Origin: Mytilus californianus
Lineage: Eukaryota
Assembly: GCF_021869535.1 (NCBI RefSeq)
Contig: NW_026262734.1
Location: 6,014,001 to 6,078,000 of the forward strand
Reading direction: 5' to 3'
Length of the DNA stretch: 64,000 nucleotides
Numbering within the stretch: position 1 is the first letter of the stretch; the number at the start of each line of letters is the position of its first letter. The position numbers and the translations under genes are program-made. A model generated the notes under the pieces. It was not told the origin of the DNA. It searched no databases and saw nothing but the letters and a program-made list of their open reading frames with translations. This document shows positions 33,543 through 64,000 of this stretch, piece by piece.

Positions 33543-33583
33543 TTGATAATCTTTAAATTTATCTTACCTTGTATACACTTCTA

Positions 33584-36500
33584 TATGGAATGGTTGATAC
33601 CTCCATATGTCAATATGGAATGGTTGATAACTCCATATGTCAATATGGAATGGTTGATACCTCAATATGTCAGTATGGAATGGTTGATACCTCCATATGT
33701 CAGTATGGAATGGTTGATACCTCCATATGTCAGTATGGAATGGTTGATACCTCCATATGTCAGTATGGAATGGTTGATACCTCCATATGTCAGTATGGAA
33801 TGGTTGATACCTCCATATGTCAATATGGAATGGCTGATATGTCAATATGGAATGGTTTATACCTCCATATGTCAGTATGGAATGGTTGATACCTCCATAT
33901 GACAATATGAAATGGTTGATATGTCAATATGGAATGGTTGATACCTCCATATGTCAGTATGGAATGATTGATACTTCCAAATGTCAGCATGGAATGGTTG
34001 ATACCTCCATATGTCAGTATGGAATGGTTGATACCTCCATATATCAGTATAGAATGGTTGATACCTCCATATGTCAGTATAGAATGGTTGATACCTCCAT
34101 ATGTTATTATGGAATGGTTGATACCTCCATATGTCAGTATAGAATGGTTGATACCTCCATATGTCAATATGGAATGGTTGATATGTCAATATGGAATGGT
34201 TGATATGTCAATATGGAATGGTTGATACCTTCTCATGTCAGTATGGAATGGTTGATACCTCCATATGTCAGTATTGAATGGTTGATACCTCTATATGTCA
34301 ATATGAAATGGTTGATACCTCCATATGTCAGTATGGAATGGTTGATTCCTCCATATGTCAGTATAGAATGGTTGATGCCTCCATATGTCAATATGAAATG
34401 GTTGATACCTCCATATGTCAGTATGGAATGGTTGATACCTCCAAATGTCAGTATCGAATGGTTGATACATCCATATGTCAGTATGGAATGGTTGATACCT
34501 CCATATGTCAGTATAAAATGGTTGATACCTGCATATGTCAGTATGGAATGGTTGATACCTCCATATGTCAATATGGAATGGTTGATACCTCCATATGTCA
34601 ATATGGAATGGTTAATACCTCCAAATGTCAGCATGGAATGGGTGATACCTCCATATGTCAATATGGAATGGTTGATACCTCCAAATGTCAGCATGGAATG
34701 GTTGATACCTCTATATGTCAATATGGAATGGTTGATACCTCCATATGTCAGTATTGAATGGTTGATACCTCCATATGTCAGTATGAAATGGTTGATACCT
34801 CCATATGTCAGTATGGAATGGTTAATACCTCCAGATGTCAATATGGAATGGTTGATACCTCCATATGTCAATATGGAATGGTTGATACATCCATTAGTCA
34901 GAATGGAATGGTTGATACCTTCACATGTCAGTATGGAACGGTTGATACCTCCTCATGTCAGTATGGTATGGTTGATACCTCCATATGTCAGTATGGAATG
35001 GTTGATACCTCCATATGTTAATATGGAATGGTTGATACCTCCATATGTCAATATGGAACGATTGATACCTCCATATGTCAGTATGGAATGGTTGATACCT
35101 CCATATGTCAATATGGAATGGTTGATACCTCCATATGTCAATATGTAATGATTGATACCTCCATATGTCAATATGGAAAGGTTGATACCTCCATTTGTCA
35201 GTATGGAATGGGTTGATATCTCCATATGTCAATATGGAATGGTTCATACCTCCATATGTCAATATGGAATGGTTGATACCTCCATATGTCAGTATGGAAT
35301 GGTTGATACCTCCATATGTCAATATGAAATGGTTGATACCTCCATATGTTAGTATGGAATGGTTGATACCTCAAAATGTCAGTATCGAATGGTTGATACC
35401 TCCATATGTCAGTATGGAATGGTTGATACCTCCATATGTCAGTAAAGAATGGTTGCTACCTCCATATGTCAGTATGGAATGGTTGATACCTCCATATGTC
35501 AATATGGAATGGTTGATATGTCAATATGGAATGGTTGATACCTCCATATGTCAGTATGGAATGGTTGATACCTCCAAATGTCAGTATGGAATGGTTGATA
35601 CCTCCATATGTCAATATGGAATGGTTGATATGTCAATATGGAATGGTTGATACCTCCATATGTCAGTATGGAATGGTTGATACCTCCATATGTCAGTATG
35701 GAATGGTTGATACCTCCAAATGTCAGCATGGAATGGTTGATACCTCCATATGTCAATATGGAATGGTTGATATGTCAATATTGAATGGTTGATACCTCCA
35801 TATGTCAGTATGGAATGGTTGATACCTCCATATGTCAGTATAGAATGGTTGATACCTATTTATGTCAGTATAAAATGGTTGATACCTCCATATGTCAGTA
35901 TGGAATGGTTGATACCTCCATATGTCAGTATGGAATGGTTGATACCTCCAAATGTCAGCATGGAATGGTTGATACCTCCATATGTCAATATGGAATGGTT
36001 GATATATCAATATGGAATGGTTGATACCTCCATATGTCAGTATAGAATGGTTGATACCTCCATATGTCAGTATAAAATGGTTGATACCTCCATATGTCAG
36101 TATGGAATGGTTGATACCTCCATATGTCAGTATGGAATGGTTGATACCTCCAAACGTCAGCATGGAATGGTTGATACCTCCATATGTCAATATGGAATGG
36201 TTGATATATCAATATGGAATGGTTGATACCTCCATATGTCAATATGGAATTGTTGATACCTCCTAATGTCAGCATGGAATGGTTGATACCTCCATATGTC
36301 AATATGGAATGGTTGATATGTCAATATGGAATGGTTGATACCTCCATATGTCAGTATTGAATGGTTGATACCTCCATATGTCAGTATGGAATGGTTCATA
36401 CCTCCATATGTCAGTATGGAATGGTTGATACCTCCATATGTCAATATGGAATGGTTGATACCTCCATTTGTCAATATGAAATGGTTGATACATCCATATG

Positions 36501-37220
36501 TCATTATGGAATGGTTGATACCTCCATTTGTCAATATGGAATGGTTGATACCTCCATATGTCAGAATGGAATGGTTGATACCTTCACATGTCAGTATGGA
36601 ATGGTTGATACCTCCATTTGTCAATATGAAATGGTTGATACCTCCATATGTCAGTATGGAATGGATGATACCTCCATTTGTCAATATGGAATGGTTGATA
36701 CCTCCATATGTCAATATGGAATGGTTGATGCCTCCAAATGTCAGCATGGAATGGTTGATACCTCCATATGTCAATATGGAATGGTTGATATGTCAATATG
36801 GAATGGTTGATACCTCCATATGTCAGTATTGAATGGTTGATACCTCCATATGTCAGTATAGAATGGTTCATACCTCCATATGTCAGTATGGAATGGTTGA
36901 TACCTCCATATGTCAATATGGATTGGTTGATACCTCCATTTGTCAATATGAAATGGTTGATACCTCCATATGTCAGTATGGAATGGTTGATACTTCCATA
37001 TGTCAGTATGGAATGGTTGATACCTCCATATGTCAGTATGGAATGGTTGATACTTCCATATGTCAGTATGGAATGGTTGATACCTCCATATGTCAGTATG
37101 GAATGGTTAAACTTCCATATGTCAGTATGGAATTGTTGATACCTCCATATGTCAGTATGGAATGGTTGATACCTCCATTTGGCAGTATGGAATGATTGAT
37201 ACCTCCATATGTTAGTATGA
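33584..37220. repeat. 30-bp minisatellite (atggaatggttgatacctccatatgtcagt)n, ~120 copies, with interspersed 22-bp deletion variants
   Basis: Direct reading; explains all the MEWLIPPYVS, YGMVDTSICQ, TYGGINHSIL and DIWRYQPFHT ORFs. Confidence 0.97.
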
Positions 37221-42886: not shown

Positions 42887-43552
42887 ATGGCTGATGCTGA
42901 CAAAGAAATTCCGACACAGGAAGAAATTGTAAGTGACCAAAAGGAATCTGTGCAAACACCACAGACAGATGCACAAAACGTTAATGAAAATGCTGCAAAC
43001 GGTGGTGACAAGCCTCAAGATGATGAAGAACAAAAAGATCAATCACTAGAGAAAGTAGGTACGTCAGAAGAACAGAAAGAAGATGATCAGGAAACATCTG
43101 AGACAAAAGAGGAGAAAACCAGTGAATCTGTACCCCAAAATGATGAGCAAAAGCAAGGAGATGATGCTCAACCAGAACAGACAACTGTACAGGAGCAAGA
43201 CACAGAGGAACCTAAACAACAAGAAACAAAGCCAGAGGAATCACAACCACAAGAAACAACAGAGGAACAAGAACCACAGGAAACAACTACAGAATCTCAT
43301 CCACAAGAAGAAACAACTGACACTGCTGCACCAACTGAATCACAAACATTAGGAAATCAAACTCAAAGCACAAGACCTTCGTCTGCAAGTAAAAAAGTTC
43401 CTTCACCACCTCCCCCAACAGAAACTGGCAAAACTGCCAGTATTGCAGATACAAAGACTATTGACACAGTTGTTATACCAGAAGCACCAAAAATTCCATC
43501 ACCAGACAGGCCACAGTCAGAACTAGAAGAAAAAATTGCCACAACTGCTTTG
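42887..43552 (+). CDS. CFAP251: CFAP251 exon 1 (acidic E/Q/T-rich low-complexity N-terminus)
   Basis: ATG...TTAL|gtatgc; phase 0. Confidence 0.9.
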
Positions 43553-46500
43553 GTATGCTATTGCATCCTCATAATTTTAAAAATTATCATTATTTGACAT
43601 CACAGTCATTCCTGTTAAATTTTGACGTACGTCTCAAAAGAAAGTAATTGTTGTATAATGTCAATAGTTCAAGTCAATTAAAGTGTCACAAATAGTAATA
43701 AGGTGTTATCAGAACAATATAAATCACACTAAACCATGCTAAAATAAGAATTAAGGTATCCTAAGCATACATGTAATTCTGATAAGGATGTCCTAAATAT
43801 TAAACAAATTTAACATGTAAGATTATGGGCTACAATGTGATAACTGTCAACTGGACTCGTCTTTAACTGAATTTGTGACAGAAAAAAAGTAGCTTTTAGG
43901 TATGCCAAGCTTAAAGTACAACATACTTACATTTCTCTTAATTTTGAAGACATGTAATGATGTTAGAGTAAAATTGACTTAATTCTTGCGATGGACACGT
44001 TCAAAAGTATTACTGTGATACACATCATTATATCTTATTAGATCACTATCACACTGTGAAATGAATTTATCTTCCCAATTGTCTTCACACTGGGAAATCA
44101 CAATTTTAACACGACATTAAACAGAACATTCAATTATTTACAGTGTGAAAGTCAGCATCTTTAAGACATGTTATTGTCTAAAAGCATGAAAAAAATATGA
44201 TTATGTATTATGTTTACAATGTATGCTAATATGGAAACAACACCATTTTAAAAAATTTTTGAAGGAAGATAACTCTACCACTAAACGTGTATTTAAAATA
44301 AACCACGGCCACTGACAGTGTATTTAAAATAAAACACACCCATTGACCTAATATTAAATATACTCGGTTCCCACATGTTCACTTTTAACCAATGATATTC
44401 CTAGAAGTGTATACAAGGTAAGATAAATTTGAAGATTATATGGTTGCATTAGTACTTATAATTCTTTTTTTCAGAATATTGTATGGTCGTTTGGATTAAA
44501 CAGAAATATCCAAGTGTTGAATTTGACAGATGATAATCGTAAACTGATAATGTATGCCTGTGCTCATGTTGGTGTACTGTTTGATTTTGAGAATAATAGA
44601 CAGCATATATTACAAGGACATGTAAGTGTTATTTCTAAAGGAATCACATTACTGGCACTAGATTTCCTTTTTTGAACAGCAAAACATCTGAACATAATAC
44701 TACTATGAAAATATTTCTGTAATCTCATTATAATTATATTAACCATGAAAAAAAAAGAATTTATAAAAAAAATGAATAATTATATATATATATTAAAAAC
44801 CAATTGTTCAGAGAACAATTGAAGGTCTTTCCACAAAAAAACATATATTTTAATATGAAAATAGTAAAATTCGTTTTAAAATGTCATTTCCAGCTTCAAA
44901 TGATAGCTTATTGTACGCTGATTCCAAAAATATATGGTTTCTATACAATATTTTTTAAATAAGGGAGATAATTTGTTACTTCCGGTTTGAAAAATGTTAC
45001 TTCCGGTATCATTCAAACGTTTAATTAACACTGATACCAAAAATATCTGGTTCTATAAACTTTTACATTAATTAAATACAGAAAAAAGCTACTTCCGGTT
45101 TACACAAGGTCACTTCTGGTTGGCTTTTCTAAGGTTAAATGGCTTGAAACCTAATGCAAAAAGTCCCATGGATTTATCATGTATACATATGAGGTAAAAG
45201 CAAAGGTCAAAATCTAGAACGTCAATTTAACCTATGACCTTGAGCTCAATTTCAAGGTCATCAACCAAGGACCTAAAATCAAAAGACCCTAGGACTTAAT
45301 TATATTTGGTTCATGAGTTATATCACCATATGCATATTTTTAAATAAAAGAGGGGAGAAAACTCTAATTTAATATAAGCGTACCCTTTAAACCGATATAT
45401 ATGTATGTGTTACGACATGTCGCAACTATCAATTAAGTAAAAATATGTTGTCGATATCTTATATCGTGTTTGAAAAGAGGTGAAAATAAGCCAAAATCCC
45501 AAATTTAAAAATGACTTTGACCTTGACCCTATTTTCTTTTTTTTGGACCAAGGACCTCAAATCAAAAGACCCTAGGTCCCTATATATCACTTATGGTTTA
45601 CAAATTACAATTACATTTTACTTATTTTAAATACAGAAGGGGAAATAACTCTCATATGGAGTTTCTGGACCGCTTCGGTCAAAATTATTCTTAAGATCCT
45701 GAGGATATAACGAACAAATTGGAGACATAAATTTGTCATAATCTTTTACGGTTGCGAAGGAGATGCGTACACAAGAAAAACAGTGTTTGGGGAGATGACT
45801 CTTACAAAAAAAAAGTATTCGGCTAAACAGGGTCAGTTTCAAAATCGTAATAACTGTTCGATATCATACACAAAAATTCTAAGTGACATCTTGCGAAGCA
45901 AAAAAGCACCGTCAGAAAAAAGTGGCGGAAGAAGAAAAAAATAATAATAATCAGAAGAAGAAAACCAATAGGTCTTTCCACAGAAAAGTGGAAAAACTTA
46001 TAAACTTATACCTAACACAATACCATTTTTACCTTTTATGGATTCACATACATGTATATGATTCTAATATATCTATAATACATTAGGTTCTTTAGGGGCA
46101 TCTTTTTATTTTCCAATTCTCAAAGCAACACATAAATGAATTGCTGACATCAATAAATTAATTTTAGGTAGGTTTTTTTTATTGAAAATTGTAGATTCCT
46201 TATAATTGACCCAAACAAGTGATGTTTGGTGACATACATTAGCTACATGTAGTACCATCATCCTGTATTATGATACACATATATATGTATGTAAATATTT
46301 AAACCAAACAGGAATAGCAGGATACTAAAATTTAGTTAGTGTACATTGTACTATAGAGTATGTATACTAGATATAATATGCTTTTCAATTCCTTTTTTCA
46401 GTCAAACCCCTTGACCTGTACATGTGTAAGTGAAGATAAAAGATGGTTAGCTACAGGAGACAAGGGAGTGGACAGTATGGTCATTATCTGGGACACTTAT

Positions 46501-49500
46501 ACCGGGTAAATAACAGCAATTTTGCCTATGCTTTTTACATCATGTAAATTTGTTGTTACAATATCTAAAGACTTGTTTAACCAATTTGGCCATTTTCCAA
46601 TATTGATGTATTAAAAAACATTCTAAATGCAAAAATATCTTGCTTTACCATTGAAATATTTCTATCAAACTATTACATTACGTTAAGCAATCAGCAACGA
46701 ATCAAACTAGTACAGTTATGTCAGTGAAGAAAATAGAACCTTTAGAGTTATTTCCCTTTGTCATAAAAAATTTCATTTGTTTTTTTGTAGAGGGTATTTT
46801 AAAAAAAAAAATCTTGTTACGACAAATTGAATAAGATTGGACTCAGTATTACATGTTTCATCATGAATTATTTATTTATTGAATATTGTTTTTAACTTAA
46901 ACGTTACATGAAAGACATTACCAGAAATTGTGACTGTCCCTTGTATTATCTGATAGATGCTAAGCCTAAAAAGAATATGATTATAACAAACTTTAAGTTG
47001 TCAGTAATATGACTAAGACTTGTTATCGTAATATCTCTCTTAAACTTGAAATCATTATACGTTTATTGCAGAATTCCAGTACAAACAATATTTAACAATG
47101 ATCAAGAAGGTGGAGTTGTTGCTATGGCAATGACCCCTGATGCTCGGTACCTAGCAACATTGAGTTCAGGCCCTACTCAGGTAAAATTATTGATTTTTTT
47201 CACTTAAATTTAAATTCTTTTGTCTGCCTGTATTTTAATCTGTAATCAACACTGCCCTGAAAACTACTGCATGGAGTTCATCATGCTTAAACTTGTCTGT
47301 GTTAATAATTTAGTGCAGTTAAAAGTGCAATAATTCTTTAATACCCTACCTATGATAGAAGGAGGCTTGATGTGTTTCCACCGGTCTTGTCTGTTAGTCC
47401 ATCTTTTCCGTATCAGACTTTAATTTTTGTTTACGGTAATTTTCCATGAAGTTGCATTCACATCAACTTGAAACTTAGTGCACATGTTCATTATGATACA
47501 AACTTGTAAGGTTTTTTCAGTCATTGCAGATTGAAATGTGATGGGGTGAGCAGGGCATGATGTCATATCTTGTTTTTCAATTTACATTATAAGTATCCTC
47601 ATGTAAACTAAAGTATCTCAAAAAGCATTTGAATTATCAGACAGTCTGCTGAAATAGTAATTATTGGTATAAGTTTTATCCCTGACTGTGTAATAAAATA
47701 AATTGCAAAAAAAGTGAAAAAAAATCAATATGTTGACACCCGTCTTATCTGACATTTAATTTTCAAAACATTATAAATAGAGTTTTCAATATTTTTTTCT
47801 TCACTCAAATAAACACACATTGCCATATCAGCTCACTACATTATAGCTGGTTTTGGTATTGACCTCTGTCCTTCTATTATAATTTGACAAACAAAGAAGA
47901 GATATATTGAACATTCTTTTTTTGAGAATTTAGATATGCCTACATTAATTGAGCCTTCTTGTTTCAGGTTTTGTCAATATGGAATTGGACTGTAGATGGG
48001 GAATCCCCTATGTGTACAGCCGAGTTGAACCCTAAGTTTGGATTACAGAATTTTATTTTATTTAATCCTGATGATATACACTATCTGGTGACGAACAGTG
48101 AATCACAAGTCATATTTTATCATTGGGTAAGTGAGAATTACATCCTATCTATAAAGAAAATTGAAGTTTTACTAGAATACAATGCATGCCAACAGGACAC
48201 ATGCCAGGTTATTATTGACAACTATCTTATAAACAAATCAAACCAGGAATAAAACATAAAAAAACAGAACAGAATATTAACAGTGGGTCAATGTTAGATG
48301 TCATTTGTGTTTTTTATTGGCCAAAACATCAATGTCATTATATTCATAATTTGAAAAACAATTTTGGCAAGTTGATATTTCACTGCTTGGTAAAATATGC
48401 TCTCCAAAATTCTGATAAATATATAAAGAGTTCTGAACTACATTAACTGACAGAAACTGGATAATCAATAATTAATTTCAGTTCTCAATCAATTAATTAA
48501 AATTAGTTTGGTTGTGTTGTCTCATTGGCACATACCCCGCATCTTGTTTTCATACGTACAGTGAATGTTTTATTATAGAATGATGGACACATGGAATACT
48601 ATGCTCCACCTCTGACTGACCAGGATTTCAACAAACAGGTTGGAAGATACAGCCAGTCTATTTTCCAGAGAAACAGCTCTCGAGTTTTGACAGCTACACA
48701 TATTGGGAACCTTGTAGTCTGGGACAACAATAAACCTCTCACTAAGTGTAGGTTGAATTTAACATATGAAAATATTGAATGTGATGGAGTTAAGTATCTG
48801 CAATGACCACAGTATAACATTGGAAATACAAATTTGTGTGAACCTAAAGTTATTTGCAAAGGAAATTATATATGCATATGCTATGTATATTTGACACTGT
48901 TCTGGACAAACTATATAAATAATAAAAGTTTGTGTTCCTGTTTCGCAATACTTTACAATTGGCATTACATGTAGCTATGTTTAAACTGGAAACATTTAAT
49001 AGTTTTGAAAACAGTTTTTTATTGTATCATTGTCAAAATATTTTTACCAATTAGGTATAAATGATCATCTCGAAGTAAAAAGCAATATTATAAGTCTTTA
49101 ATAACGTTTGTAGTTTCAGAAAAAATATAGGCTGACACTTTATCCTTAAAAGCTTTTAACAGAAATGTAGGAGATTTATTTCTCATGGGTCAAAATTTAT
49201 TTGTTGGATTTGCTTGTACTGAAGTTGCAAATGGCCTTTTTCTGGAATATGTGCTTTTGTCACTTTTTGTATTTTAGCTTGAAACTTCACTGTAGTGTGT
49301 TATACAAAGAATAATCATTTGGCTATTGATAATGAAATCTCACATTGAAGAATATTAAGTGTTAAATTGGAAAATTATTGTGCATGTATTTGGGGCCCAA
49401 ATGCTGACCGTGTCTAACCGTCTTGCCTTGCCCTTTGTATAATTAAGATTTGTTCTGCTTTATATTTTGTGTGTGGTTCAATGTACAGAATATAATTTGT

Positions 49501-52500
49501 TTATATAAAATATAAAAAATAAGGAGATGTGGTATGATTGCCAATGAGACAACTATCCACCAAAGTTCAAATGAAATGGGTGTAAGCAATTATAGGCAAC
49601 AATGAGAAAACCCATACCTTATATAGTTGTCTATAAAAGGCCCTGACATGAAAAATGGGAAACAATTCAATTGAGAAAACTAACAGCCTATAAATTTATA
49701 ACAAAACAATTTAAGAAAAACAAATATTACAGACATGAACCAACTACAATCACTGATCTACAGGCTCCTGATGCCCTTTATAAAGCTTTCATTGTGATTT
49801 ATTTTACAGTGGTGATCTCAGAACCATCTGCAGACAAGAAAGCATTAAAGATAATTAAGTTACAGGACAGGGGAATCAATGTATTGACAACCACTGATAA
49901 GTAAGTATTAAAGATAATGTCAGTCTGTCCATTGGAATTCTAGTCACATTTTTCTCAAGAATTGCAAATCAGAGCTTCCTGAAATTTTATACTAGCTTAA
50001 GCTTACTTTACCGTGTGATGTATTTTCACAGCCGGCCTGATACAACAATTAATGACCCGGCTTTTCTTTGTCCACTAATATAGTTCCTTTTTATTATAGT
50101 GTCTTTTTTCTTTATTTTTGTTCTTTGCCTTCCTGATTCATTTCTTAGTTTTTATAGAGTGGAAATGAAAGAAGAGAGTTGAAATAAATTTTTGGATGCA
50201 TTATTTTAACTATTCAGTAGTGGGAATGAATGATTAGGCCAGTTGCAAAAGGTAACATTTATAGTTTTCGGAACACCTCTTGACTTAAATGTCCATACCA
50301 GTATGGATGTGTTTTGGCTAAATTAATGACCTGCATAGAAGGGATTTTCCTAAAAGTTGGATATAATGTTGTGAGACTTGTACTGTACATTAACATATCA
50401 AAAATTTTGCAAATTTGCAGGTTAATTTTTTTTTATGTAAAAAAACGTTATAAAGAAATGATAAGGAAATTAATTGTGGTCTATGGCCAGAGCTCATTGT
50501 CTAGTTATTTAACTTATTATACATGTAATGATGTATATATATATGCGTACAAATAATGGTCATATATGAACTTTTTGTCACATTTCTTCAGGAACCACAA
50601 TGCAGAGCCTCATGATATTAGGTTTCAAGCTTCATGTAAGCATGTAATACCCTGTGATGTGTTTTGACATCCATTGCTCATAAATTTCCTGTTTACCAAA
50701 TTCTTAATAACAGGGTATTGTAGTAAGCAATAGGTCACAGTTCATCTTGTTTTTTTTATGCCTCCGCTGTAGGCAACAAGGGCATTAAGTGTTACCCTTG
50801 ACCTTCCATCCCATTTTCTGCACTCTAAACGTTAGTTTGCCTCATGCAAATTTTATGTAACTCATAAACAATACTAAGAACCACAACACGCAGACAGAGT
50901 TTGGATTTGGGTTGTGAGTCATTTACCGTTCTAGAGTTGTGCTCCTTTTTTAACTTGGAAAATTGCAAAGCATCTTTCGTTTATTTTTGTTTTTTTATGC
51001 CCCCACCGTAAGCGATGGGGGCATTAAGTATTACCCTTGACCTTCCGTGTTTCCGTCCGTCACATGTTTGTTTGTTTGAAGCTTGGGCGAGGTAATTCAT
51101 GTCCTAGGACACATTCTTCTTTTATTTTTTCCATTAATTGTGTTTGATACAAGTATCTTACATTTGATTTACCAGAGGTAAAGTCAGATTATACCATAAA
51201 TAGTTTTATAAGAATAATACTGTTGGTCCTGACGTTTTATGTAAATTGTTGTCTAACTATATTTTACAGGTTTATAGTGCTGGGAGATATGACTGGACAT
51301 GTCAAATTGTTATCTGACTCTATTTTACAGGTTTATATTGCTGGGAGATATGACTGGACATGTCAAATTGTTATCTGACTCTATTTTACAGGTTTATATT
51401 GCTGGGAGATATGACTGGACATGTCAAATTGTTATCTGACTCTATTTTACAGGTTTATATTGCTGGGAGATATGACTGGACATGTCAAATTGTTATCTGA
51501 CTCTATTTTACAGGTTTATATTGCTGGGAGATATGACTGGACATGTCAAATTGTTATCTGACTCTATTTTACAGGTTTATAGTGCTGGGTGATTGTTATG
51601 TGACTATATTTTACAGGTTTATAGTGCTGGGTGATTGTTATGTGACTATATTTTACAGGTTTATAGTGCTGGGTGATCTGGCTGGACATGTCAAATTATT
51701 ATCTGACTATATTTTACAGGTTTATAGTGCTGGGTGATCTGGCTGGACATGTCAAATTGTTATCTGACTATATTTTACAGGTTTATAGTTCTGGGTGATT
51801 GTTATCTGACTCTATTTTACAGGTTTATAGTGCTGGGTGATTGTTATGTGACTATATTTTACAGGTTTATAGTGCTGGGTGATCTGGCTGGACATGTCAA
51901 ATTATTATCTGACTATATTTTACAGGTTTATAGTGCTGGGTGATTGTTATGTGACTGACTATATTTTACAGGTTAATAGTGCTGGGTGATTGTTATCTGA
52001 CTATATTTTACAGGTTTATAGTGCTGGGTGATTGTTATCTGACTATATTTTACAGGTTTATAGTGCTGGGTGATTGTTATTTGACTATATTTTACAGGTT
52101 TATAGTGCTGGGTGATTGTTATCTGACTATATTTTACAGGTTTATAGTGCTGGGTGATTGTTATCTGACTATATTTTACAGGTTTATAGTGCTGGGTGTT
52201 TGTTATCTGACTATATTTTACAGGTTTATAGTGCTGGGTGATTGTTATGTGACTATATTTTACAGGTTTATAGTGCTGGGTGATATGGCTGGACATGTCA
52301 AATTCTTTGATCAAAGTCTCAAGCTGGTTCATTGGTAAGTAGATTTTGTCCATTACAAGTCTGTAAGATAAAAGATAGAATTTTTCTATTATTGAATTAA
52401 AATTGAGAATGGAAATGGGGAATATGCTATTGAGACAACAACCCGACCAAAGAGCAGACAACAGCAGAAGGCTGATGCACAAACTGTAAACCCATCTTTG

Positions 52501-55500
52501 GAACTAATTCCATCGAAAATTGTACTATGTAAACAGCGTCATCTATGCAGTGTAGTGATTAACTGTGATTTCTCAATACTCTCTACAACAGTGATAACAT
52601 GTTACTCAGCAACATGGTGTTTCAAGTTGTACCGGACATTGAAAATTATACATAGTGTCTCCATTTGTAGAAGACATTTTCAATTAGCTTACAGCACAAC
52701 ACAATGTCTCACCTACAAGTAATAAACATTACAATATAGTGTCTCCATTTGTAGGGGACACCTACAAGTACATTACAACATAGTGGCTCCTTTGGTAGGG
52801 GACACCTACAAGTACATTACAACATAGTGGCTCCTTTGGTAGGGGACACCTACAAGTACATTACAACATAGTGGCTCCATTGGTAGGGGACACCTACAAG
52901 TACATTACAACATAGTGGCTCCTTTGGTAGGGGACACCTACAAGTATATTACAACATAGTGGCTCCTTTGGTTGGGGACACCTACAAGTACATTACAACA
53001 TAGTGGCTCCATTGTAGGGGACACCTACAAGTACATTACAACATAGTGGCTCCATTGTAGGGGACACCTACAAGTACATTACAACATAGTGGCTCCATTG
53101 TAGGGGACACCTACAAGTACATTACAACATAGTGGCTCCTTTGGTAGGGGATACCTACAAGTACATTACAACATAGTGGCTCCATTGGTAGGGGACACCT
53201 ACAAGTACATTACAACATAATGGCTCCTTTGGTAGGGGACACCTACAAGTACATTACAACATAGTGGCTCCTTTGGTAGGGGACACCTACAAGTACATTA
53301 CAACATAGTGGCTCCTTTGGTAGGGGACACATACAAGTAAATTTCAACATAGTGGCTCCATTGGTAGGGGATACCAAGTACATTACAACATAGTGGCTCC
53401 TTTGGTAGGGGACACATACAAGTACATTTCAACATAATGACTCCATTGGTAGGGGACACCTACAAGTACATTTCAACATAGTGGCTCCATTGGTAGGGGA
53501 AACCTACAAGTACATTACAACATAGTGGCTCCTTTGGTAGGGGAAACCTACAAGTACATTACAACATAGTGGCTCCTTTGGTAAGGGACACATACAAGTA
53601 CATTTCAACATAGTGGCTCCATTGGTAGGGAAAACCAAGTACATTACAACATAGTGGCTCCTTTGGTAGGGGACACCTACAAGTATATTACAACATAGTG
53701 GCTCCTTTGGTAGGGGAAACCTACAAGTACATTACAACATAGTGGCTCCTTTGGTAGGGGACACATACAAGTACATTTCAACATAGTGGCTCCATTGGTA
53801 GGGAAAACCTACAAGTACATTACAACATAGTGGCTCCTTTGGTAGGGAAAACCTACAAGTACATGACAACATAGTGGCTTCTTTGATAGGGGACACCTAC
53901 AAATATATTACAACATAATGACTCCATTGGTAGGGGAAACCTACAAGTACATTACAATATAGTGGCTCCTTTGGTAGGGGACACCTACAAGTATATTACA
54001 ACATAATGACTACATTGGTAGGGGAAACCTACAAGTACATTTCAACATAGTGGCTCCATTGGTAGGGAAAACCTACAAGTACATTACAACATAGTGGCTC
54101 CTTTGGTAGGGGACACCTACAAGTACATTACAACATAGTGGCTCCTTTGGTAGGGGACACCTACAAGTACATTACAACATAATGACTCCATTGGTAGGGG
54201 ACACCTACAAGTACATTACAACATAGTGGCTCCTTTGGTAGGGGACACCTACAAGTACATTACAACATAATGACTCCATTGGTAGGGGACACCTACAAGT
54301 ACATTTCAACATAGTGGCTCCTTTGGTAGGGGACACCTACAAGTACATTACAACATAGTGGCTCCTTTGGTAGGGGAAACCTACAAGTACATTACAACAT
54401 AGTGGCTCCTTTGGTAGGGGAAACCTACAAGTACATTACAACACAGTGGCTCCTTTGGTAATGGACACTTATACAATATAACCAGATATGATGCTATAAA
54501 AAGTCTTATAGCTTAAACAGATCACTGCTATAAATTGACCACTATTTAACAAACAAACACAAATTCATTTTAAACTTTCACTTATAATTCCTCTTTCTCT
54601 TGTACACAAAACAAGTAGGTTGAATCAAATCTAATCAATAAAAATGGGAAGATAGTATTAAAATGTTTTTGAAGGATAGCTGAGACTTGAAGTATCAATA
54701 GTTTCTCATGTCCATGATAAAATGTCATCTTCCATTACATTGTAGGTATCAGGATTTCCACCTCGGACCAGCCACTGCCATCTCATTTGCCCATTATCCA
54801 GATTTCCAATCAGTGTAAGTACCGGTCATTTGCATATATTAACCTAGTTATTTCTAGTTTATTTATAAATCTAGCATGTCATAGCTTCGTTGTTAAATAT
54901 TCTCCATATAGATGTTAAAAGTCACATGATGCTAGAATAAAAAATATCTATATATTAATCTTGTTTGAGCAAGTCAGCATTTCTGGTAAAATGAGGGAAG
55001 GAAACTTATAATTCTGTACATGAATAAGAGGAACTGTATAGTATAAATCAATGATAAAGCAATCCACCAACAACATAAAAAAAGACCATCTAATTCAGTC
55101 ACTGTAACAAGTTATTGTACATTATACTTGTTAATTTTCAGAGCCAAAGAAGGAACTAACTACCCACCAGATGCTACAATAGAAGCTAGGAAGTTTGTCA
55201 TTAGAGATTTTGTTGTAGGAAGTAGTATTGCTGTCTTTGGTAATGTCACTGCAGATGGAACTAAAGTTGATGTGAGTATTGTCCATTTGTTTGTGTTTAG
55301 TGTTTAAATATAAGGGAAACTTTGTGTCTGATATATTTTACAGTTATTTTAAGCTATTACCCTTGTCTTAGAGTTTTCATGACAATGGGATTCATTTATA
55401 AAAATATTATGTTCAAACGTAATGGAGGCATGAAAAAAGATCAGTCAGCTAGTAGCCATTACATTTCTAGTGAACAAATGATAGACACTGGCCATATAGC

Positions 55501-58500
55501 AGTAAATAGAACATTTTGAGGAAAAGGGTTAGAGACTCGGTCATATCAAACAAGGTTTTTAACTAAAGGAAGGACTGCTTTGAAAAGGTTTATTTTTTAG
55601 GTTTCTTTAAAGGACAATTATTTTACAATAATTAAAAAACTAACCGTTTGCTTACAGGGAATATTATAAATTTTTAACTATAGGAAGACACAAACATGCA
55701 TTTAAGATAAAAAAAAAAGTTAAGATAAAATCTATTCTTATCTTGACTATAATCAAGTTAACAAATTGGTCTTCTTTTTTTCAATGAAATGACAATATGC
55801 AAATTAACAAAAATGTTTATATTGTAGTTAATTCACAGAGAACATGATGCTGCCATTCATGCTTTATCTGCTCATCCTACAAAGTAAGTTTGTGAGAGTT
55901 ATCTCCCTTTAGTATCAGAATGTTTACATTGTATTTAATTCACAGAGAACATGATGCTGCCATTCATGCTTTATCTACTCATCCTACAAAGTAAGTTTAT
56001 AAGAGTTAACACCACAGACTTGCAAGTTTCATTTAATTTTGGCATGGCATCATTATTTGGTTTTATGATAAGGCTGACTTTTCACATCATGTAGTAGGTT
56101 ATATACAGTGAATCTTAAGGTGTCCTTGTCAATTTGACTATCTGATTAGTTAACATTTTCAATGCCAGAATCGAAAATATATTGTATAAAGTGTTCAACT
56201 GGCCATATACAAATATGGCATCATTAGTCTTTTAATTCCTTAAATGATTCAAAATACTAAAGAATATAATATAGCTGAGAGCATTTTAAGTTTTCTAGTT
56301 GATGTTTGAGAAACTGATTTCAAACATTTCTTTTTTTTCAGACCATATTTGATAATTGGTAGTTATGCAGGATTAATAAAGATATGGGACTATGAAAAGA
56401 AGTAAGTCAATAAGTAATGATCTATTTTATCATGGAGATTTAGTTTAAAACCAAATCGAATGTAAAGTCAAAAAGGTATATAATTAAACATTGGAGTAAT
56501 AGTCAATCGCTTCACCATTATCTGAAGACCTTATTTAGGATTCTGTGATACTTTACCTGTTGATGTCATTCAGCAATCAGTTTACTTTGTGGCAGACTTT
56601 TTCTCTTGTAATGTTAAAGTTTTATTGGAACATCTGTGATACACTTCTAGTGGCATACACATAGAGATAATGTGTATTAAAAACAAGTGTTAGATATATG
56701 TCCAAGATTAAGTTTACCTGTTTTGAGTGCATTGCATTGCTTTCCAGTGCATTTAAAACATTGGTCTGTACTTCTCCTTTTTGTGGTATGAACTATACAA
56801 CAAAACTTTAATCTATATATTTATTATCAGACAAGTGGTAGTAACCCGACAGTTTGAGAGAGGATGTTTAATCAGATGTTGTGCATTTGACCCTAAAGGA
56901 CAATATATAGGTAAGTTTTATATACCATTGGGTTTTATCAGAAATATTTTGACAGCTTTAGATGTTTAAGAACATGATCAGTCAGGGGTTTATCAGGGTT
57001 TGTTTGTTATTTCCCATAGTAATCAGGTTTGTTTGTTTGTTATTTCCCATAGTAATCAGGTTTGTTTGTTTGTTATTTCCCATAGTAATCAGGTTTGTTT
57101 GTTTGTTATTTCCCATAGTAATCAGGTTTGTTTGTTTGTTATTTCCCATAGTAATCAGGTTTGTTTGTTTGTTATTTCCCATAGTAATCAGGTTTGTTTG
57201 TTTGTTATTTCCCATAGTAATCAGGTTTAACCCATTTGTAGTCACAGCAACAAATAGTAACAAAAACATACAATTCTGTTTTTAAGTAATATTCTGATAC
57301 AATTAATATTTTTGACAGATTTTGCTTTTGAGAATGGTCAGCAGAGATTATAGATTTTGATAAATTTACTATTTGTTTACAGCTATTGGTTTTGTGAATG
57401 GTCAGCTGAGAGTATAGATTTTGATAAATTTAATATTTGTTTACAGCTATTGGTTTTGTGAATGGTCAGCTGAGAGTATAGATTTTGATAAATTTACTAT
57501 TTGTTTACAGCTATTGGTTTTGTGAATGGTCAGCTGAGAGTAGTAGATTCTATCACTTTAGAAGATGAATTATCAGAACCGTTCCGTTATGCCAGATATG
57601 CCATCACTCATTTAGCTTTCTCCCATGATTCTCAATACTTAGCTACAGCCGTAAGTATTTTACTTGGGTTATTTATTCATCTCAACAGGAACCTGTTGCA
57701 TGAAGTTCAAATGTATGATTTTTTTAGAAATTAAAGTCTTCACAATTAATTGCTTCAAAATATTTGTTAATGTGTGTTCTGTGAAGTGATGATCACATCC
57801 ATTTTGTTTGACTGTAATTACTTGTCATTATCATTGTCATGCTATACTGTTTACTACAACTTTCAGAGCCAAGCTACCAAAGTAAGTCACATGCTTGTTG
57901 TAAAAACACACCAATTTATTATAGAAACAACCAAATATTTTATTCCATTTAGCTTCTTTTTTTCTATTTTTTTTTTATATACCGGTAATTGAATAGTTAC
58001 AATTTCAGTATGCACCCTTTACTCTTTATGTCAATAAGTTTAAGTTCATATCATAGTGGTGTATTGAGTTATATGTATATATATATTTCCCTACACCAAA
58101 TTTAGTTTATTGGTATATATGTATAATTACCCTTTTATTCTTTTCCAAATCCTAATAAGTGTTTTAATTTGCTATTCAATGATCATTTTTTTTTTGTATT
58201 ATTCATACACATTTTATAACATAAATGCAATATTGGAGAAAAAGTTAATATATTCTCTCAACTCACTGAACTGTTGTTTGGTTACATTCGCCAGCTTGGA
58301 TGTTATACCACTCAAAGTATTTACTTAATTTCTTATCTATAAAGTATTGTTCCTGCATGAGTTATCTCCCATATCATAGGGCATGTACACTCACTAGTTT
58401 ACAAAGGATTATTGCATGTTATATTTCATGTAGTAAAAAGATTATTTCTAATGTATTTACATGTATATATAGGAGAGAGCTTTATAGTCTAGACACATTT

Positions 58501-61500: not shown

Positions 61501-64000
61501 ACGATGGAAAATACTTGTTCACTGCAGGGGGAGCTGATGCTACAGTACACATGTGGGAAATCAACGTCAGGTATGTTACTCATGCACACATCACACATCC
61601 ATGGGTTAGGATCGTTTGGGTCAGTTTTGATACTTATCAATAGGTCACACACACACAGGTTAATATTGTGTGTGATTAAGATAGAATGTCTTTGATAGCT
61701 TTCTTCTTCAAATATGATTAAAATATTAACTTAAATGGGATTTAAAATTTGTAAAAGTATATAAAAAGAAATTGAAATGAAGGAAAATCAGATTTGTACC
61801 TATAGAAAATAATGTCTGTTACAACAGCATTTAAACATAGCACATCCTTTGGGAAACAGACTTTAATACTAGTATACACATCTTGATATAAACCAGAATT
61901 CACCATAAAATTTTATTTTCATAATTTATTCTGTTCACTATGCTTGAAAAAAGTAAAAACAAAAATATTGAAGTATTTAATGCTTGAATGTTTGTTAGAT
62001 TTTTCTTGGCAACTTAATTTATCATTTAAAGAAATACAACCTTTTATAAATTGTAAGAATTAAATAGAGAATTGAAATCTCATTGGAATTTGGAACCAGA
62101 ATAGTGCCCTTTTTTTTTTTTTTTGAAGTAAATATTTTTTATTACATATCTGCTGTTTTAACAATTTACTCGGATAACAGCGTTAGCCCGAGTATCCATG
62201 TTATTAGTTACTGAATCTCCAGGGAAAAAGCTTGTTAAAAAAGTAATCAATTATTATCAGTAATAACATCTACATTCTTTTAAATACAGTGTATACATAT
62301 AAAGAATAAAATCCCATGGTATAAATCACGTGTTTACGGAATATCAATTTGCTTTCCGAATTTGTACTCATTTTCCCTTATTTATTTTAATCATTGACAC
62401 AGTTATTTTGTACTTGACCTTTTGTGTCGGATTTGTTAACCTGTTTACTAATTCATTGTTCGAAAACTAGAGCAAAAATGCACATGTTTGTAGTTAACAT
62501 TAGATTATAAACTAGTTTGCTAAGTATTATATACTATTCATTAGTGCCTTACTTACTTCAATCCTCAAGTCTAAATGATATTAATAAATGGAAATGTGGG
62601 GGTGATAACTAGACAGCAATCCATCAACATGTGCATAATGTTAAACTCTAAATGTTCTTGTGTATAAAAGAGACTATAAAAAATCTTCAATCGTATTTAA
62701 AACACATTCTATTAAATCTTTAAAAACCATTCTGTTGTTTATACTTTATGGTGAATTAGAAGCACACTGTGGACTTGAGGGGAGATTTAAAACAATTCTA
62801 TGTTTTATATTTCACAGTGTTTTGGAAGCACAGTCCAGACTTGGAGGAGAAGATTTAATACCATTCTATGGTTTACTGGAAGGTGGTAGAGATGGAGAAC
62901 TGTTCAGAGAATTAGAAGATTACTTTTATTATGCACAAATCAGAAGGTAACTTCACTCTTAAATTTAATAAAGGAAAACCCACTATCAAAAAATGTTTCA
63001 CTATAAATATATGTTCTAACATGAAAGTGAAAACCAAATAACAGAAAAGAAATTTCAAAAATGATAACCTTTTTTGATCCTTTTAAAATAATATCTAGGC
63101 TCTGTTTTTCAAATGTATTTTATACATTTTCATTTAAGTGTCTAATATCCATATGTCATTAAAGAATGAACCCTTTACTTTGCAGTCAAGGTGTGAATGC
63201 AATGGATAAAAGAGAAGTATCAGTAAAGATTCCACTATCAGAAGTACCATTTGTAATGAGGGCAATGGGTTTCTACCCATCTGAACAAGAGGTAAGATTC
63301 CACTATCAGAAGTACTGTTTGTTATGAGGGCAATTCGTTTCTACCCATCTGAACAAGTGGTAATGTTATCATATAATACTAGTTGTACATAAAGCACTTT
63401 TAACACAATTTATTTAAAACTATAGGTAAAAAGATTAATGAATTCTACAGTAATTTTAATTAAAATAGAAGTTTTTGTGTAACTTTAAGTGCTGTCATTC
63501 TCTCTCATGAAAGTCATAATTAATTGACTGTAAAGTAGTCAAAAACTTGAATATTTGATTAGTTATCTCCTTTTTGACAGTTTGAAAAAATAATATTTTT
63601 TAGAAGTTACTTGTAAACTAAACTGACACCATCACATTTCTGTTTGTTTATTGTCATGGTTAAATGTTCCTTGTTTTTTAATCCAATTTTAACAGCGTTT
63701 TCTGTTAAAATTAAAAAAAAGGTTATTTGGCTGGCAGACAGGGACATTCAGCTATAGTTTAAACATGAAACCAGAAATTAAAAGTCAAGATAACACTATA
63801 CAATTTTATTGGCTATTAAGTGACAAGTTACCAAATTTATTAAGACACTTTATAAAATTCATAAAAGTATCTAATAGTTTTCCTGAATCCTGTGGACAAA
63901 AATGCTAGAATCTTATTCCTTATATATTTTATATACCTTTATAACACATGGTTTTCTTTGTGAACAGATTGAGGATATGTTAAATGAAGTGAAGTTCAGT
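42887..64000 (+). CDS. CFAP251: Cilia- and flagella-associated protein 251 (WDR66), WD40 repeats; 3' end beyond the window
   Basis: 21 GT-AG exons splice in frame with no stop. Recognisable family motifs include [77 protein letters not shown] and [23 protein letters not shown]. Confidence 0.95.
44475..44621 (+). CDS. CFAP251: CFAP251 exon 2
   Basis: [10 protein letters not shown]...HILQGH|gtaagt. Confidence 0.95.
44791..46001 (-). mobile_element. ~1.2-kb Helentron-associated (HINE/DINE-1-like) element in CFAP251 intron 2
   Basis: Sub-terminal repeat aggtctttccac at 44823-44834 and 45970-45981; inverted partner gtggaaaaactt at 45988-45999; perfect stem-loop caattgttc-aga-gaacaattg at 44801-44821. 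Absent from the inverted duplicate. Confidence 0.8.
46402..46505 (+). CDS. CFAP251: CFAP251 exon 3
   Basis: [22 protein letters not shown]...WDTYTG. Confidence 0.95.
47072..47180 (+). CDS. CFAP251: CFAP251 exon 4
   Basis: IPVQTIF...[16 protein letters not shown]. Confidence 0.95.
47968..48126 (+). CDS. CFAP251: CFAP251 exon 5
   Basis: VLSIWNW...VIFYHW. Confidence 0.95.
48579..48747 (+). CDS. CFAP251: CFAP251 exon 6
   Basis: [10 protein letters not shown]...[12 protein letters not shown]; t|gtaggt. Confidence 0.93.
49810..49900 (+). CDS. CFAP251: CFAP251 exon 7
   Basis: [13 protein letters not shown]...VLTTTD; aa|gtaagt. Confidence 0.93.
51247..52265 (+). repeat. Mixed 61-/42-bp array of the CFAP251 exon 8 acceptor plus exon start (21 acceptors)
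   Basis: ttttacag|gtttata counted 21 times between 51269 and 52265. Confidence 0.95.
52266..52334 (+). CDS. CFAP251: CFAP251 exon 8
   Basis: [22 protein letters not shown]; tg|gtaagt. Confidence 0.92.
52711..54460. repeat. 44-bp minisatellite (acctacaagtacattacaacatagtggctcctttggtaggggac)n, ~40 copies, in CFAP251 intron 8
   Basis: Direct reading. Confidence 0.95.
54746..54814 (+). CDS. CFAP251: CFAP251 exon 9
   Basis: [22 protein letters not shown]. Confidence 0.92.
55142..55271 (+). CDS. CFAP251: CFAP251 exon 10
   Basis: [12 protein letters not shown]...DGTKVD|gtgagt. Confidence 0.92.
55828..55883 (+). CDS. CFAP251: CFAP251 exon 11
   Basis: attgtag|[18 protein letters not shown] aa|gtaagt. 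Confidence 0.9.
56342..56401 (+). CDS. CFAP251: CFAP251 exon 12
   Basis: [19 protein letters not shown]. Confidence 0.93.
56831..56910 (+). CDS. CFAP251: CFAP251 exon 13
   Basis: [11 protein letters not shown]...AFDPKGQYI. Confidence 0.93.
56995..57227. repeat. 33-bp minisatellite (gtttgtttgtttgttatttcccatagtaatcag)n, ~7 copies
   Basis: Direct reading; lies in CFAP251 intron 13. Confidence 0.95.
57511..57650 (+). CDS. CFAP251: CFAP251 exon 14
   Basis: [12 protein letters not shown]...[12 protein letters not shown]|gtaagt. Confidence 0.93.
59353..59526 (+). CDS. CFAP251: CFAP251 exon 15
   Basis: DGEYTVSVY...[10 protein letters not shown]...[12 protein letters not shown]. Confidence 0.95.
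60028..60171 (+). CDS. CFAP251: CFAP251 exon 16
   Basis: [13 protein letters not shown]...FVLTANDQ. Confidence 0.95.
60345..60790 (+). mobile_element. Long copy of an abundant dispersed repeat (gRtgtggtatgattgccaatgagacaact family)
   Basis: Related copies at ~16272, ~18180-18570 (-), ~20180, ~23765, ~48520 (-) and ~49520. Confidence 0.75.
60962..61044 (+). CDS. CFAP251: CFAP251 exon 17
   Basis: [27 protein letters not shown]. Confidence 0.95.
61337..61570 (+). CDS. CFAP251: CFAP251 exon 18
   Basis: MEVVPT...LPLDGNPH...YLFTAGG...MWEINV. Confidence 0.95.
62818..62946 (+). CDS. CFAP251: CFAP251 exon 19
   Basis: [13 protein letters not shown]...[11 protein letters not shown]. Confidence 0.95.
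63186..63291 (+). CDS. CFAP251: CFAP251 exon 20
   Basis: [10 protein letters not shown]...[12 protein letters not shown]|gtaaga. Confidence 0.95.
63968..64000 (+). CDS. CFAP251: CFAP251 exon 21 (partial, runs off the window)
   Basis: tgaacag|[11 protein letters not shown]. Confidence 0.9.
   Translation, partial: MEDMLNEVKFS

What the first reader, a model, noticed from the sequence alone, without database searches (positions are those of the whole stretch)
51247..52334. CFAP251 exon 8 is preceded by 20 decoy acceptors, seven of them in frame and all of AG|GT type
Seen: there are 21 ttttacag|gttt sites. The 61-bp units shift the frame. The last seven 42-bp units (acceptors at 51971-52223) are stop-free and in frame, so using them would insert 14-98 aa of [14 protein letters not shown] repeats into a WD40 blade. 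Each unit carries a CTGAC/CTAAC branch-like motif. Because the exon starts with GT, every decoy is an AG|GT site. Established: AG|GT is the recursive-splicing (ratchet point) configuration and the substrate for intron gain by tandem duplication. Inference: mis-spliced products could be repaired by re-splicing, although GTTTAT is a weak donor.
Basis: partly seen in the sequence, partly recalled or inferred. Interest (0 to 1): 0.7.

Follow-up and report, generated by a model that had tools for sequence, protein, structure and literature searches.

The report
Silent splice-acceptor minisatellite in mussel CFAP251
The end of an intron and the start of the next exon of a mussel cilia gene have been copied 20 extra times in tandem, giving 21 near-identical splice acceptors, yet the RNA available joins only to the last one, so this is a known, apparently harmless kind of repeat ("mirage") and not a splicing ratchet.

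Summary
There are 21 TTTTACAG|GTT acceptors at 51270-52266, spaced 61, 42 or 46 nt apart. The last seven decoys are in frame and stop-free; the first 13 run into stops. The gene is CFAP251, with exon 7 at 49810-49900 and exon 8 at 52266-52334. The 61-nt unit is the last 22 nt of intron 7 plus the first 39 nt of exon 8. The 42-nt unit is a 19-nt deletion derivative. The array occurs only at this locus in the genome.

In four RNA data sets from three studies, the only exon 7 junction is 49900->52266, and depth over the array is zero. Depth is low, with only 2 raw reads on that junction. Three decoys are identical to the real site over -24..+19, so the choice must depend on the exon body, the donor or position.

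Recursive repair is unlikely. The regenerated donor TAA|GTTTAT matches U1 at 4 of 9 positions, against 7 of 9 for the real donors, and the intron is only 2.4 kb.

This is a "mirage" junction minisatellite, known from amphioxus, and the mirror of the human F7 intron 7 repeat. The scan has already noted about 20 such arrays elsewhere in this genome. Four of the six arrays in this gene overlap exon junctions (P about 0.002).

The parts
49810..49900 (+). CFAP251 exon 7 (91 nt), donor AA|GTAAGT; it ends with two bases of a codon
   Evidence: RNA joints 48747->49810 and 49900->52266; sequence; single copy in the genome
49901..52265 (+). Intron 7 (2365 nt); the array makes up 43% of it
   Evidence: GT..AG joint in four runs; lengths
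51239..51247 (+). ATGTAAATT, a 9-of-10 match to exon 8 bases +30..+39 (ATGTCAAATT). This is a short direct repeat at the two ends of the duplicated segment, and the left edge of the array
   Evidence: Local alignment of the upstream flank to the unit; nothing unit-like lies further upstream (score 13, shuffle mean 17)
51248..51269 (+). Leftmost copy of the 22-nt intron tail (CTAAC variant), ending in the first decoy acceptor
51270..51574 (+). Five 61-nt units; units 2-5 are identical. Each is 39 exon-derived nt (2-3 mismatches to exon 8) plus 22 intron-tail nt. They are out of frame with early stops
   Evidence: TRF period 61, 97% matches
51575..51971 (+). Mixed block of 42-, 61- and 46-nt units with a 206-nt higher-order period (42-42-61-61, then 42-42-61-46). 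All these decoys meet stops
51972..52265 (+). Seven 42-nt units, the in-frame stop-free decoys. Each is 19 exon-derived nt plus a 23-nt tail (the 22-nt intron tail and the last exon-derived base), a 19-nt deletion derivative of the 61-nt unit
52266..52334 (+). CFAP251 exon 8 (69 nt; [24 protein letters not shown]), the only acceptor seen in RNA; donor TTG|GTAAGT
   Evidence: joint, contig pieces; translation; alignment to CFAP251 513-533; the same exon boundary in a distant relative's contig L009; single copy
54746..54814 (+). CFAP251 exon 9 (69 nt), the next exon in the transcript contigs
   Evidence: The loose end of the X5 contig after 52337 maps to 54749-54778; sequence

Best explanation
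This is a young, locus-specific minisatellite of the 'mirage' type, meaning a tandem repeat that spans an exon-intron junction.

Origin. A 61-nt segment made of the last 22 nt of intron 7 and the first 39 nt of exon 8 was duplicated in tandem. The event probably occurred by slippage or unequal exchange between two short direct repeats at its ends: ATGTAAATT in the intron and ATGTCAAATT in the exon. One copy then lost 19 nt, giving the 42-nt unit. Both unit types were amplified in blocks.

Effect on the gene. A tandem duplication always leaves one intact junction at its outer edge, so the gene still works. The spliceosome joins exon 7 to the last acceptor, the only one continuous with the rest of exon 8 and its strong donor 69 nt downstream. 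The roughly 1 kb of copies upstream is simply removed as intron.

Shown: the anatomy, the uniqueness of the unit in the genome, the frames, and use of only the last acceptor in the RNA sampled.

Inferred: the microhomology origin, and that the exon-proximal choice rests on exon definition (exon body plus downstream donor) rather than on the acceptor signal itself.
For: Anatomy of the units, and their 1-3 mismatches to exon 8.

The array starts exactly at a 9-of-10 copy of the exon's +30..+39, with no older units upstream.

The unit occurs only at this locus in the 1.65-Gb assembly, and exons 7 and 8 are single copy.

RNA: the joint 49900->52266 appears in X21 (raw reads), X1, X2 and X5. No other GT..AG joint leaves exon 7. 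Depth over 51179-52165 is zero.

The acceptor signal cannot explain the choice. Decoys 7, 8 and 12 are identical to the real site over -24..+19. Decoys 8 and 12 differ from it by one base over -24..+39. The real site has the poorer GTGAC branch motif.

Units 2-5 are identical, and so are other sets of units, while the edge copies are more diverged. This is the concerted-evolution pattern described for mirages: and PMC3087553.

The class is described, with normal splicing retained, in amphioxus (PMC3087553). The mirror case at a donor is human F7 intron 7, where only the exon-proximal site is used (PMC1557585).

A second array in the same gene (57291-57549) has the same build: intron tail plus the first 32 nt of the exon, four copies, with the real exon after the last copy.
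Against: RNA depth is low. Only about 6% of X21 was read, giving 2 raw reads on the exon 7-8 junction, and contigs drop rare variants. Minor or tissue-specific use of decoys is therefore not excluded, and out-of-frame products would be hidden by nonsense-mediated decay.

Copy number and polymorphism were not checked against DNA reads. No close relative's locus could be fetched, so the age and the single-copy ancestral state are inferred.

The left-edge microhomology could equally be a truncated unit.

Why the last of seven acceptors lying within 300 nt of the donor wins is not explained by exon length alone.
Confidence: 0.8

Rival explanations
1. The seven in-frame decoys are used at a low level or in particular tissues such as testis, gill or larvae. 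This would give CFAP251 isoforms carrying 14-98 extra residues in a WD40 blade, either as splicing noise or as regulated variants.
For: These seven sites are stop-free and in frame. They are almost identical to the real acceptor, and most have the better CTGAC motif. They lie within 42-294 nt of the exon 8 donor. RNA depth was too low to see rare products.
Against: No read or contig covers any part of the array in four runs from three studies, although in-frame products would escape nonsense-mediated decay. No protein among 5.8 billion carries the repeat peptide, within the length range of 65-208 aa. The inserted peptide is translated intron tail and would repeat a strand inside a blade, which is probably damaging (inference).
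Confidence: 0.1
2. Recursive splicing: exon 7 is first joined to a decoy AG|GT site, then the regenerated donor is used again, so the array is removed stepwise and mistakes are repaired.
For: All 21 sites have the AG|GT juxtaposition. A canonical final mRNA is what recursion would also leave.
Against: The regenerated donor TAA|GTTTAT matches U1 at 4 of 9 positions and lacks +3A, +4A and +5G. The exon 7 and exon 8 donors (GTAAGT) match at 7 of 9. In flies a ratchet-point donor weaker than the downstream donor leads to inclusion, not removal, and ratchet points sit in very long introns (PMC8605326). This intron is 2365 nt. The GT follows from the Lys/Phe codons at the exon start, and a relative has AG|TT at the same boundary. 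No intermediate reads were seen.
Confidence: 0.03
3. The array is a regulatory element. On this reading, 20 extra branch-site and pyrimidine-tract modules recruit or soak up U2AF and U2 snRNP, and so tune the speed or efficiency of intron 7 removal.
For: There are many intact 3' splice-site modules immediately upstream of a real acceptor that itself has the weaker GTGAC branch motif.
Against: There is no evidence of any effect. Such arrays are common in this gene and, by the scan's earlier notes, across this genome, which fits a mutational by-product better. Identical neighbouring units point to recent neutral turnover.
Confidence: 0.05
4. Assembly artefact: the copy number or the order of units is wrong.
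For: I did not lay DNA reads on the array. Tandem arrays are prone to mis-assembly, and the amphioxus paper reports one such mis-assembled mirage.
Against: The array has an ordered internal structure, with unit variants and 206-nt higher-order blocks, rather than a uniform run. Many similar arrays occur in the same window. Whatever the exact count, the RNA junction shows the intron and the last acceptor are real.
Confidence: 0.04

Closest known systems
'Mirage' minisatellites of amphioxus (Adh3, globins BflGb6 and BflGb9; Canestro et al. 2002 as cited in Ebner et al. 2010, PMC3087553)
   Same: Both are tandem repeats whose unit is the host gene's own intron end plus exon start. Many units keep AG/GT signals. 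Regular splicing is unaffected. Units evolve in concert, with more diverged edge copies. BflGb6 is also an array at a 3' junction.
   Different: This one is in a mollusc, not a cephalochordate. It has more copies (20 extra, against 3-6 in BflGb6) and shorter units (42-61 nt, against 150-160). It has two unit lengths, one of which keeps the reading frame. Length polymorphism, a feature of the amphioxus cases, was not tested here.
Human F7 intron 7 37-bp VNTR (Borensztajn et al. 2006, PMC1557585)
   Same: In both, a minisatellite has a unit spanning an exon-intron boundary, giving several identical splice sites of which only the exon-proximal one is used. The pseudo-sites are functional in principle but silent.
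   Different: F7 multiplies the 5' splice site, and the first copy is used. Here the 3' splice site is multiplied and the last copy is used. The F7 choice was dissected with 50 constructs; here there is only RNA-seq evidence.
Recursive splice sites (ratchet points) of Drosophila and vertebrates (PMC8605326)
   Same: Both have a juxtaposed acceptor and donor dinucleotide, AG|GT.
   Different: Here the regenerated donor is poor, the intron is short, the site is not conserved (a relative has AG|TT), and no intermediates are seen. This site neither belongs to that class nor works like it.
Intron gain by tandem duplication of an AGGT-containing segment (Rogers 1989, as cited in PMC3087553)
   Same: A tandem duplication of a segment containing AG|GT has turned exon-derived sequence into intron.
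   Different: The duplicated AG|GT is an existing 3' splice site, so no new intron arose. Intron 7 grew by about 1 kb. The units' own GT (GTTTAT) is not used as a donor.

Membership tests
Mirage (exon-intron junction) minisatellite | Head-to-tail tandem repeats | tested here: met
   TRF periods 61 and 42, with 95-97% matches; 20 units in register
Mirage (exon-intron junction) minisatellite | The unit is made of the host gene's own intron end and adjoining exon sequence | tested here: met
   The 61-nt unit is the first 39 nt of exon 8 (1-3 mismatches) plus the last 22 nt of intron 7. The unit is found nowhere else in the genome
Mirage (exon-intron junction) minisatellite | The authentic junction sits at the array edge and normal splicing is retained | tested here: met
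   The only joint is 49900->52266, in four runs; depth is low
Mirage (exon-intron junction) minisatellite | Concerted evolution inside the array, with edge copies more diverged | tested here: met
   Units 2-5 are identical, as are 6, 7, 11 and 20, and 9, 15, 17 and 18. The leftmost intron tail differs from the internal tails at 2 of 22 positions
Mirage (exon-intron junction) minisatellite | Length instability between haplotypes or individuals | not tested
Recursive splice site (ratchet point) | Juxtaposed AG|GT | tested here: met
   All 21 sites
Recursive splice site (ratchet point) | The regenerated donor is strong enough to beat the downstream donor | tested here: not met
   TAA|GTTTAT matches at 4 of 9 positions; TTG|GTAAGT matches at 7 of 9. 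The rule comes from PMC8605326
Recursive splice site (ratchet point) | Lies in a very long intron | tested here: not met
   Intron 7 is 2365 nt
Recursive splice site (ratchet point) | Splicing intermediates or a saw-tooth pattern in RNA | tested here: inconclusive
   No read lies in the array, but the data are low-depth RNA-seq, not nascent RNA
Intron gain by tandem duplication (Rogers model) | A new intron runs from the GT of one copy to the AG of the next and restores the reading frame | tested here: not met
   The donor used is that of exon 7 (49901). The units' GTTTAT is not used, and the existing intron was lengthened

The most novel reading that the evidence does not exclude
Splice junctions may be preferred seeds of tandem duplication in this mussel genome. 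The cause could be a mutational bias, for example replication slippage at transcription- or splicing-associated pause sites or at junction-flanking microhomologies.

If so, mirage arrays would be a systematic force that lengthens introns, intronises exon sequence and supplies in-frame acceptor ladders such as this one as raw material for new exon boundaries.

In this window, 4 of the 6 arrays in CFAP251 and 5 of all 18 arrays overlap exon junctions. About 0.7 and 1.15 would be expected.
Probability: 0.25. Interest if true: 0.65.

Novelty: new member of a known kind. Interest (0 to 1): 0.3.

Why it matters
On its own this is an ordinary, probably neutral repeat.

Its value is as a natural experiment on 3' splice-site choice. 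It offers 21 acceptors, three of them identical to the real one over 43 nt and two differing by a single base over 63 nt, with seven in frame and so not hidden by decay. Only the exon-proximal one is seen in RNA. This is the mirror of the human F7 donor array, and it argues that position next to the exon body and its donor decides the choice, not the acceptor signal or transcription order.

It also shows exon sequence being turned into intron: intron 7 grew by about 1 kb, or 43% of its present length.

Together with the other junction arrays in this gene, it adds to the case that such repeats are unusually frequent in this mussel. I found no paper describing them in molluscs in the library I searched.

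Tried and rejected
Close relatives. I looked for the locus in close relatives to date the array.
- An exact-pattern scan of metagenome contigs with part of exon 8 found nothing.
- Two word-index protein searches, one with the array ORF and one with the last units plus exon 8, found only distant animals: P0001 on L009, and P0002-P0006, several of which have exons 8 and 9 fused.
- These confirm the exon boundary but say nothing about the age of the array.

The inverted CFAP251 pseudo-fragment at 30057-33583 covers only 43538-48770, not exons 7 and 8, so it cannot serve as a snapshot of the ancestral junction.

RNA structure hiding the decoys: there are no inverted repeats in 50500-53600.

Older decayed units upstream of 51239: none.

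A genome-wide satellite or transposon origin is rejected, because the unit occurs only here.

A paralogue as the source of the RNA junction is rejected, because exons 7 and 8 are single copy.

Literature. Searches for papers on duplicated acceptors and on Mytilus junction minisatellites gave nothing relevant. The original mirage paper (PMC117041) is not held, so it is cited through PMC3087553.

Searches not run. I did not run the large representative-protein search, because the protein's identity was not in doubt. Exon 7's last bases were joined to the array only inside scripts, to compute frames and donor matches.

Full report
**What is in the sequence**

Between 51239 and 52284 lies a tandem array, with TRF periods of 61 and 42 nt and higher-order periods of 206 and 145 nt. 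A motif count finds 21 TTTTACAG|GTT sites in the window, all of them here. Their first exon-side bases lie at 51270 through 52266, spaced 61 x5, 42 x2, 61 x2, 42 x2, 61, 46, 42 x7. Twenty read GTTT after the AG and one (51972) reads GTTAAT.

The 61-nt unit is the first 39 nt of the exon that starts at 52266, with 1-3 mismatches, followed by the last 22 nt of the intron. The 42-nt unit keeps the first 19 exon-derived nt and a 23-nt tail (the 22-nt intron tail plus the last exon-derived base). It is the 61-nt unit minus 19 nt.

**The gene**

The gene runs on the + strand from about 42887.
- Exon translations hit CFAP251 chains in solved axoneme structures, in collinear order. The 47959 exon matches residues 370-423 of 8j07_d2, the 57513 exon matches 667-711, and the 61302 exon matches 842-907, with E from 1e-14 to 4e-13.
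- The 22-aa exon 8 aligns to 513-533 ([21 protein letters not shown]). The match is weak because the query is so short.
- Exon 7 is 49810-49900 with donor AA|GTAAGT. Exon 8 is 52266-52334 with donor TTG|GTAAGT. Exon 9 is 54746-54814.
- The first G of exon 8 completes a Lys codon.
I did not test that.

Exons were searched singly, by reference.

- Joining exon 7 to decoys 1-13 meets a stop within 21-54 codons.
- Joining exon 7 to decoys 14-20 adds 42-294 nt in frame without stops.
- The branch-motif claim holds only in part. CTGAC precedes 15 acceptors and CTAAC one. GTGAC alone precedes four, among them the real acceptor, and TTGAC precedes one.

**Origin**
- The unit occurs nowhere else in the 1.65-Gb assembly, and exons 7 and 8 are single copy. 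This is a local duplication of the gene's own junction, not a transposon or a dispersed satellite.
- The array begins at ATGTAAATT (51239-51247), a 9-of-10 match to exon bases +30..+39 (ATGTCAAATT). Nothing unit-like lies further upstream.
- So the duplicated segment is flanked by a short direct repeat. That is the signature expected of slippage or unequal exchange, although a truncated first unit would look the same.
- Units 2-5 are identical. So are units 6, 7, 11 and 20, and units 9, 15, 17 and 18, over their shared 42 positions. The leftmost intron tail differs from the internal tails at 2 of 22 positions. This means recent block amplification or homogenisation inside the array, with older edges.
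- The exon-derived sequence is now intronic. The array makes up 43% of the 2365-nt intron 7.

**RNA evidence**

One search for runs and one laying of reads were allowed. I laid a raw-read RNA run (X21, about 6% of it read) and the contigs of three runs (X1, X2, X5; two further studies) on 48500-52700.
- All four runs show the GT..AG joint 49900->52266: 2 reads in X21 and one multi-exon contig of 2.1-3.5 kb in each of the others.
- All four also show the joint 48747->49810.
- No other GT..AG joint leaves exon 7.
- Depth is zero in every bin from 51179 to 52165 in all four runs.
- The reads lie as expected for a stranded library of a + strand gene.

The limits are real. About 8 reads cover exon 7 in X21, joints seen in fewer than 3 reads are listed only if a contig also shows them, and contigs drop rare variants. 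The dominant product is therefore certain, but rare products are not excluded. In-frame products would not be removed by nonsense-mediated decay, so their absence from three assembled transcriptomes carries some weight.

**Why the last acceptor**

The acceptor signal cannot be the reason.
- Decoys 7, 8 and 12 are identical to the real site from -24 to +19.
- Nine more decoys differ only at one base within -20..+3.
- Decoys 8 and 12 differ by one base over -24..+39.
- The real site carries the weaker GTGAC motif.
- Transcription order would favour upstream sites.

What sets the last copy apart is that it alone continues into the exon body beyond +39 and has the GTAAGT donor 69 nt downstream. 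I infer exon definition, that is, an exon-proximal rule.

The human F7 intron 7 VNTR is the mirror case. There, identical 5' pseudo-sites follow the authentic donor, are functional in principle, and stay silent. Only the most upstream, exon-proximal site is used (PMC1557585).

**Recursive splicing**

The AG|GT juxtaposition is present, but the other requirements are not met.
- After joining exon 7 to a decoy, the regenerated donor is TAA|GTTTAT. It matches the U1-complementary consensus at 4 of 9 positions and lacks +3A, +4A and +5G. The exon 7 and exon 8 donors match at 7 of 9.
- In Drosophila, ratchet points sit in long introns and need a cryptic exon. They are removed only if the ratchet-point donor beats the downstream donor; weakened ratchet-point donors lead to inclusion (PMC8605326).
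- Here the competitor would be the strong exon 8 donor. A decoy that was used would therefore be retained in the mRNA, and that is not seen.
- The GT is simply the third base of a Lys codon plus the first T of the Phe codon (TTT). A distant relative's contig (L009) has the same exon boundary with AG|TT and a single acceptor.

**Known class**

[quoted passage not shown] They were also found in amphioxus globin genes, where BflGb6 repeats the intron end plus the exon 2 start 3-6 times. Splicing there stays normal, many units keep AG/GT signals, units evolve in concert, and array length varies between haplotypes. The authors link them to Rogers' duplication model of intron gain (PMC3087553).

This array meets every defining feature I could test. 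Length polymorphism was not tested. It is therefore a new member of a known kind. My library searches found no description of such arrays in Mytilus or other molluscs.

Earlier notes of this scan, which are unchecked AI notes, list about 20 such arrays in other parts of this same genome. Several of them say that RNA joins only to the exon-proximal copy.

**Frequency**

TRF at score 200 or more finds 18 arrays, covering 27% of the window. Five overlap exon junctions:
- this one;
- 57291-57549: 64 nt x4, intron tail plus the first 32 nt of a CFAP251 exon, with the real exon after the last copy;
- 55812-56008: 107 nt x1.8, a whole small exon with both flanks;
- 63226-63363: 68 nt x2, at a donor;
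- 11616-14082: 55 nt x45, an acceptor of the neighbouring gene on the minus strand.

If units fell uniformly, about 0.7 of the 6 arrays in the CFAP251 part and 1.15 of the 18 in the window would span a junction. The probability of four or more is about 0.002, and of five or more about 0.004, using 40 and 50 junctions as approximate counts.

This is suggestive, but it comes from one window that was already flagged as odd. It needs a genome-wide census.

**Verdict**

The idea of decoys repaired by re-splicing is not supported. The array is a silent junction minisatellite. Its main interest is as a natural test of 3' splice-site choice, and as one more instance of a repeat type that seems unusually common in this mussel.

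Noticed in passing
window 57291-57549: A second acceptor array in the same gene. The 64-nt unit is copied four times, the first copy diverged. It consists of the intron tail plus the first 32 nt of the CFAP251 exon that aligns to human residues 667-711. The real exon follows the last copy, and the decoys run into a TAG at the unit junction. A TAGATT-type microhomology lies at the junction.
   Followed up: partly
window 55812-56008: A 107-nt tandem duplication (1.8 copies) of a whole small exon ([19 protein letters not shown]) with both flanks and its GTAAGT donor. The first copy has ttgtag before it and the second has ttgtat. Which copy is spliced in was not determined.
   Followed up: no
window 63226-63363: A 68-nt tandem duplication of an exon end plus its donor (GAG|GTAAGA, then GTG|GTAATG).
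   Followed up: no
window 11616-14082 (minus strand): 45 copies of a 55-nt unit carrying ...ataacttcag|TGATGG..., an acceptor of the neighbouring gene. After the last copy the sequence continues into an open exon that ends at GAG|gtaaga near 11518. It has the same build as the CFAP251 array (already noted as s1-279536).
   Followed up: partly
window 49515-49600 and 52395-52472: Two short stretches flanking exons 7 and 8 reach word depths of about 1e5 in RNA contigs and hundreds of raw reads, with many variants and contigs that join one stretch to the other. They look like two fragments of one very abundant, transcribed dispersed repeat (shared core ...TGAGACAAC...CCACCAAAG). The family was not identified.
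   Followed up: no
window 52726-54468 and 56998-57228: Purely intronic minisatellites in the same gene: 44 nt x40 in intron 8, and 33 nt x7 with 100% identical units. In all, 27% of the 64-kb window is tandem repeat.
   Followed up: no
window 30057-33583 (minus) versus 43538-48770: An inverted duplicate of the 5' part of CFAP251 (end of exon 1 to exon 6), 93-96.5% identical in five blocks, lying between two large satellites (27911-30053 and 33584-37219). It does not reach exons 7 and 8.
   Followed up: partly
L009:500-690 versus window 55142-55272 and 55828-55883: A distant relative's genomic contig (Logan ERR13986103) has the sequences of mussel exons 10 and 11 contiguous (…ADGTKVKVIHREHD…). 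The mussel has a roughly 555-nt intron there (55273-55827). Several other animals' ORFs (P0003-P0006) have exons 8 and 9 fused. Intron positions in this part of CFAP251 therefore differ between lineages.
   Followed up: no
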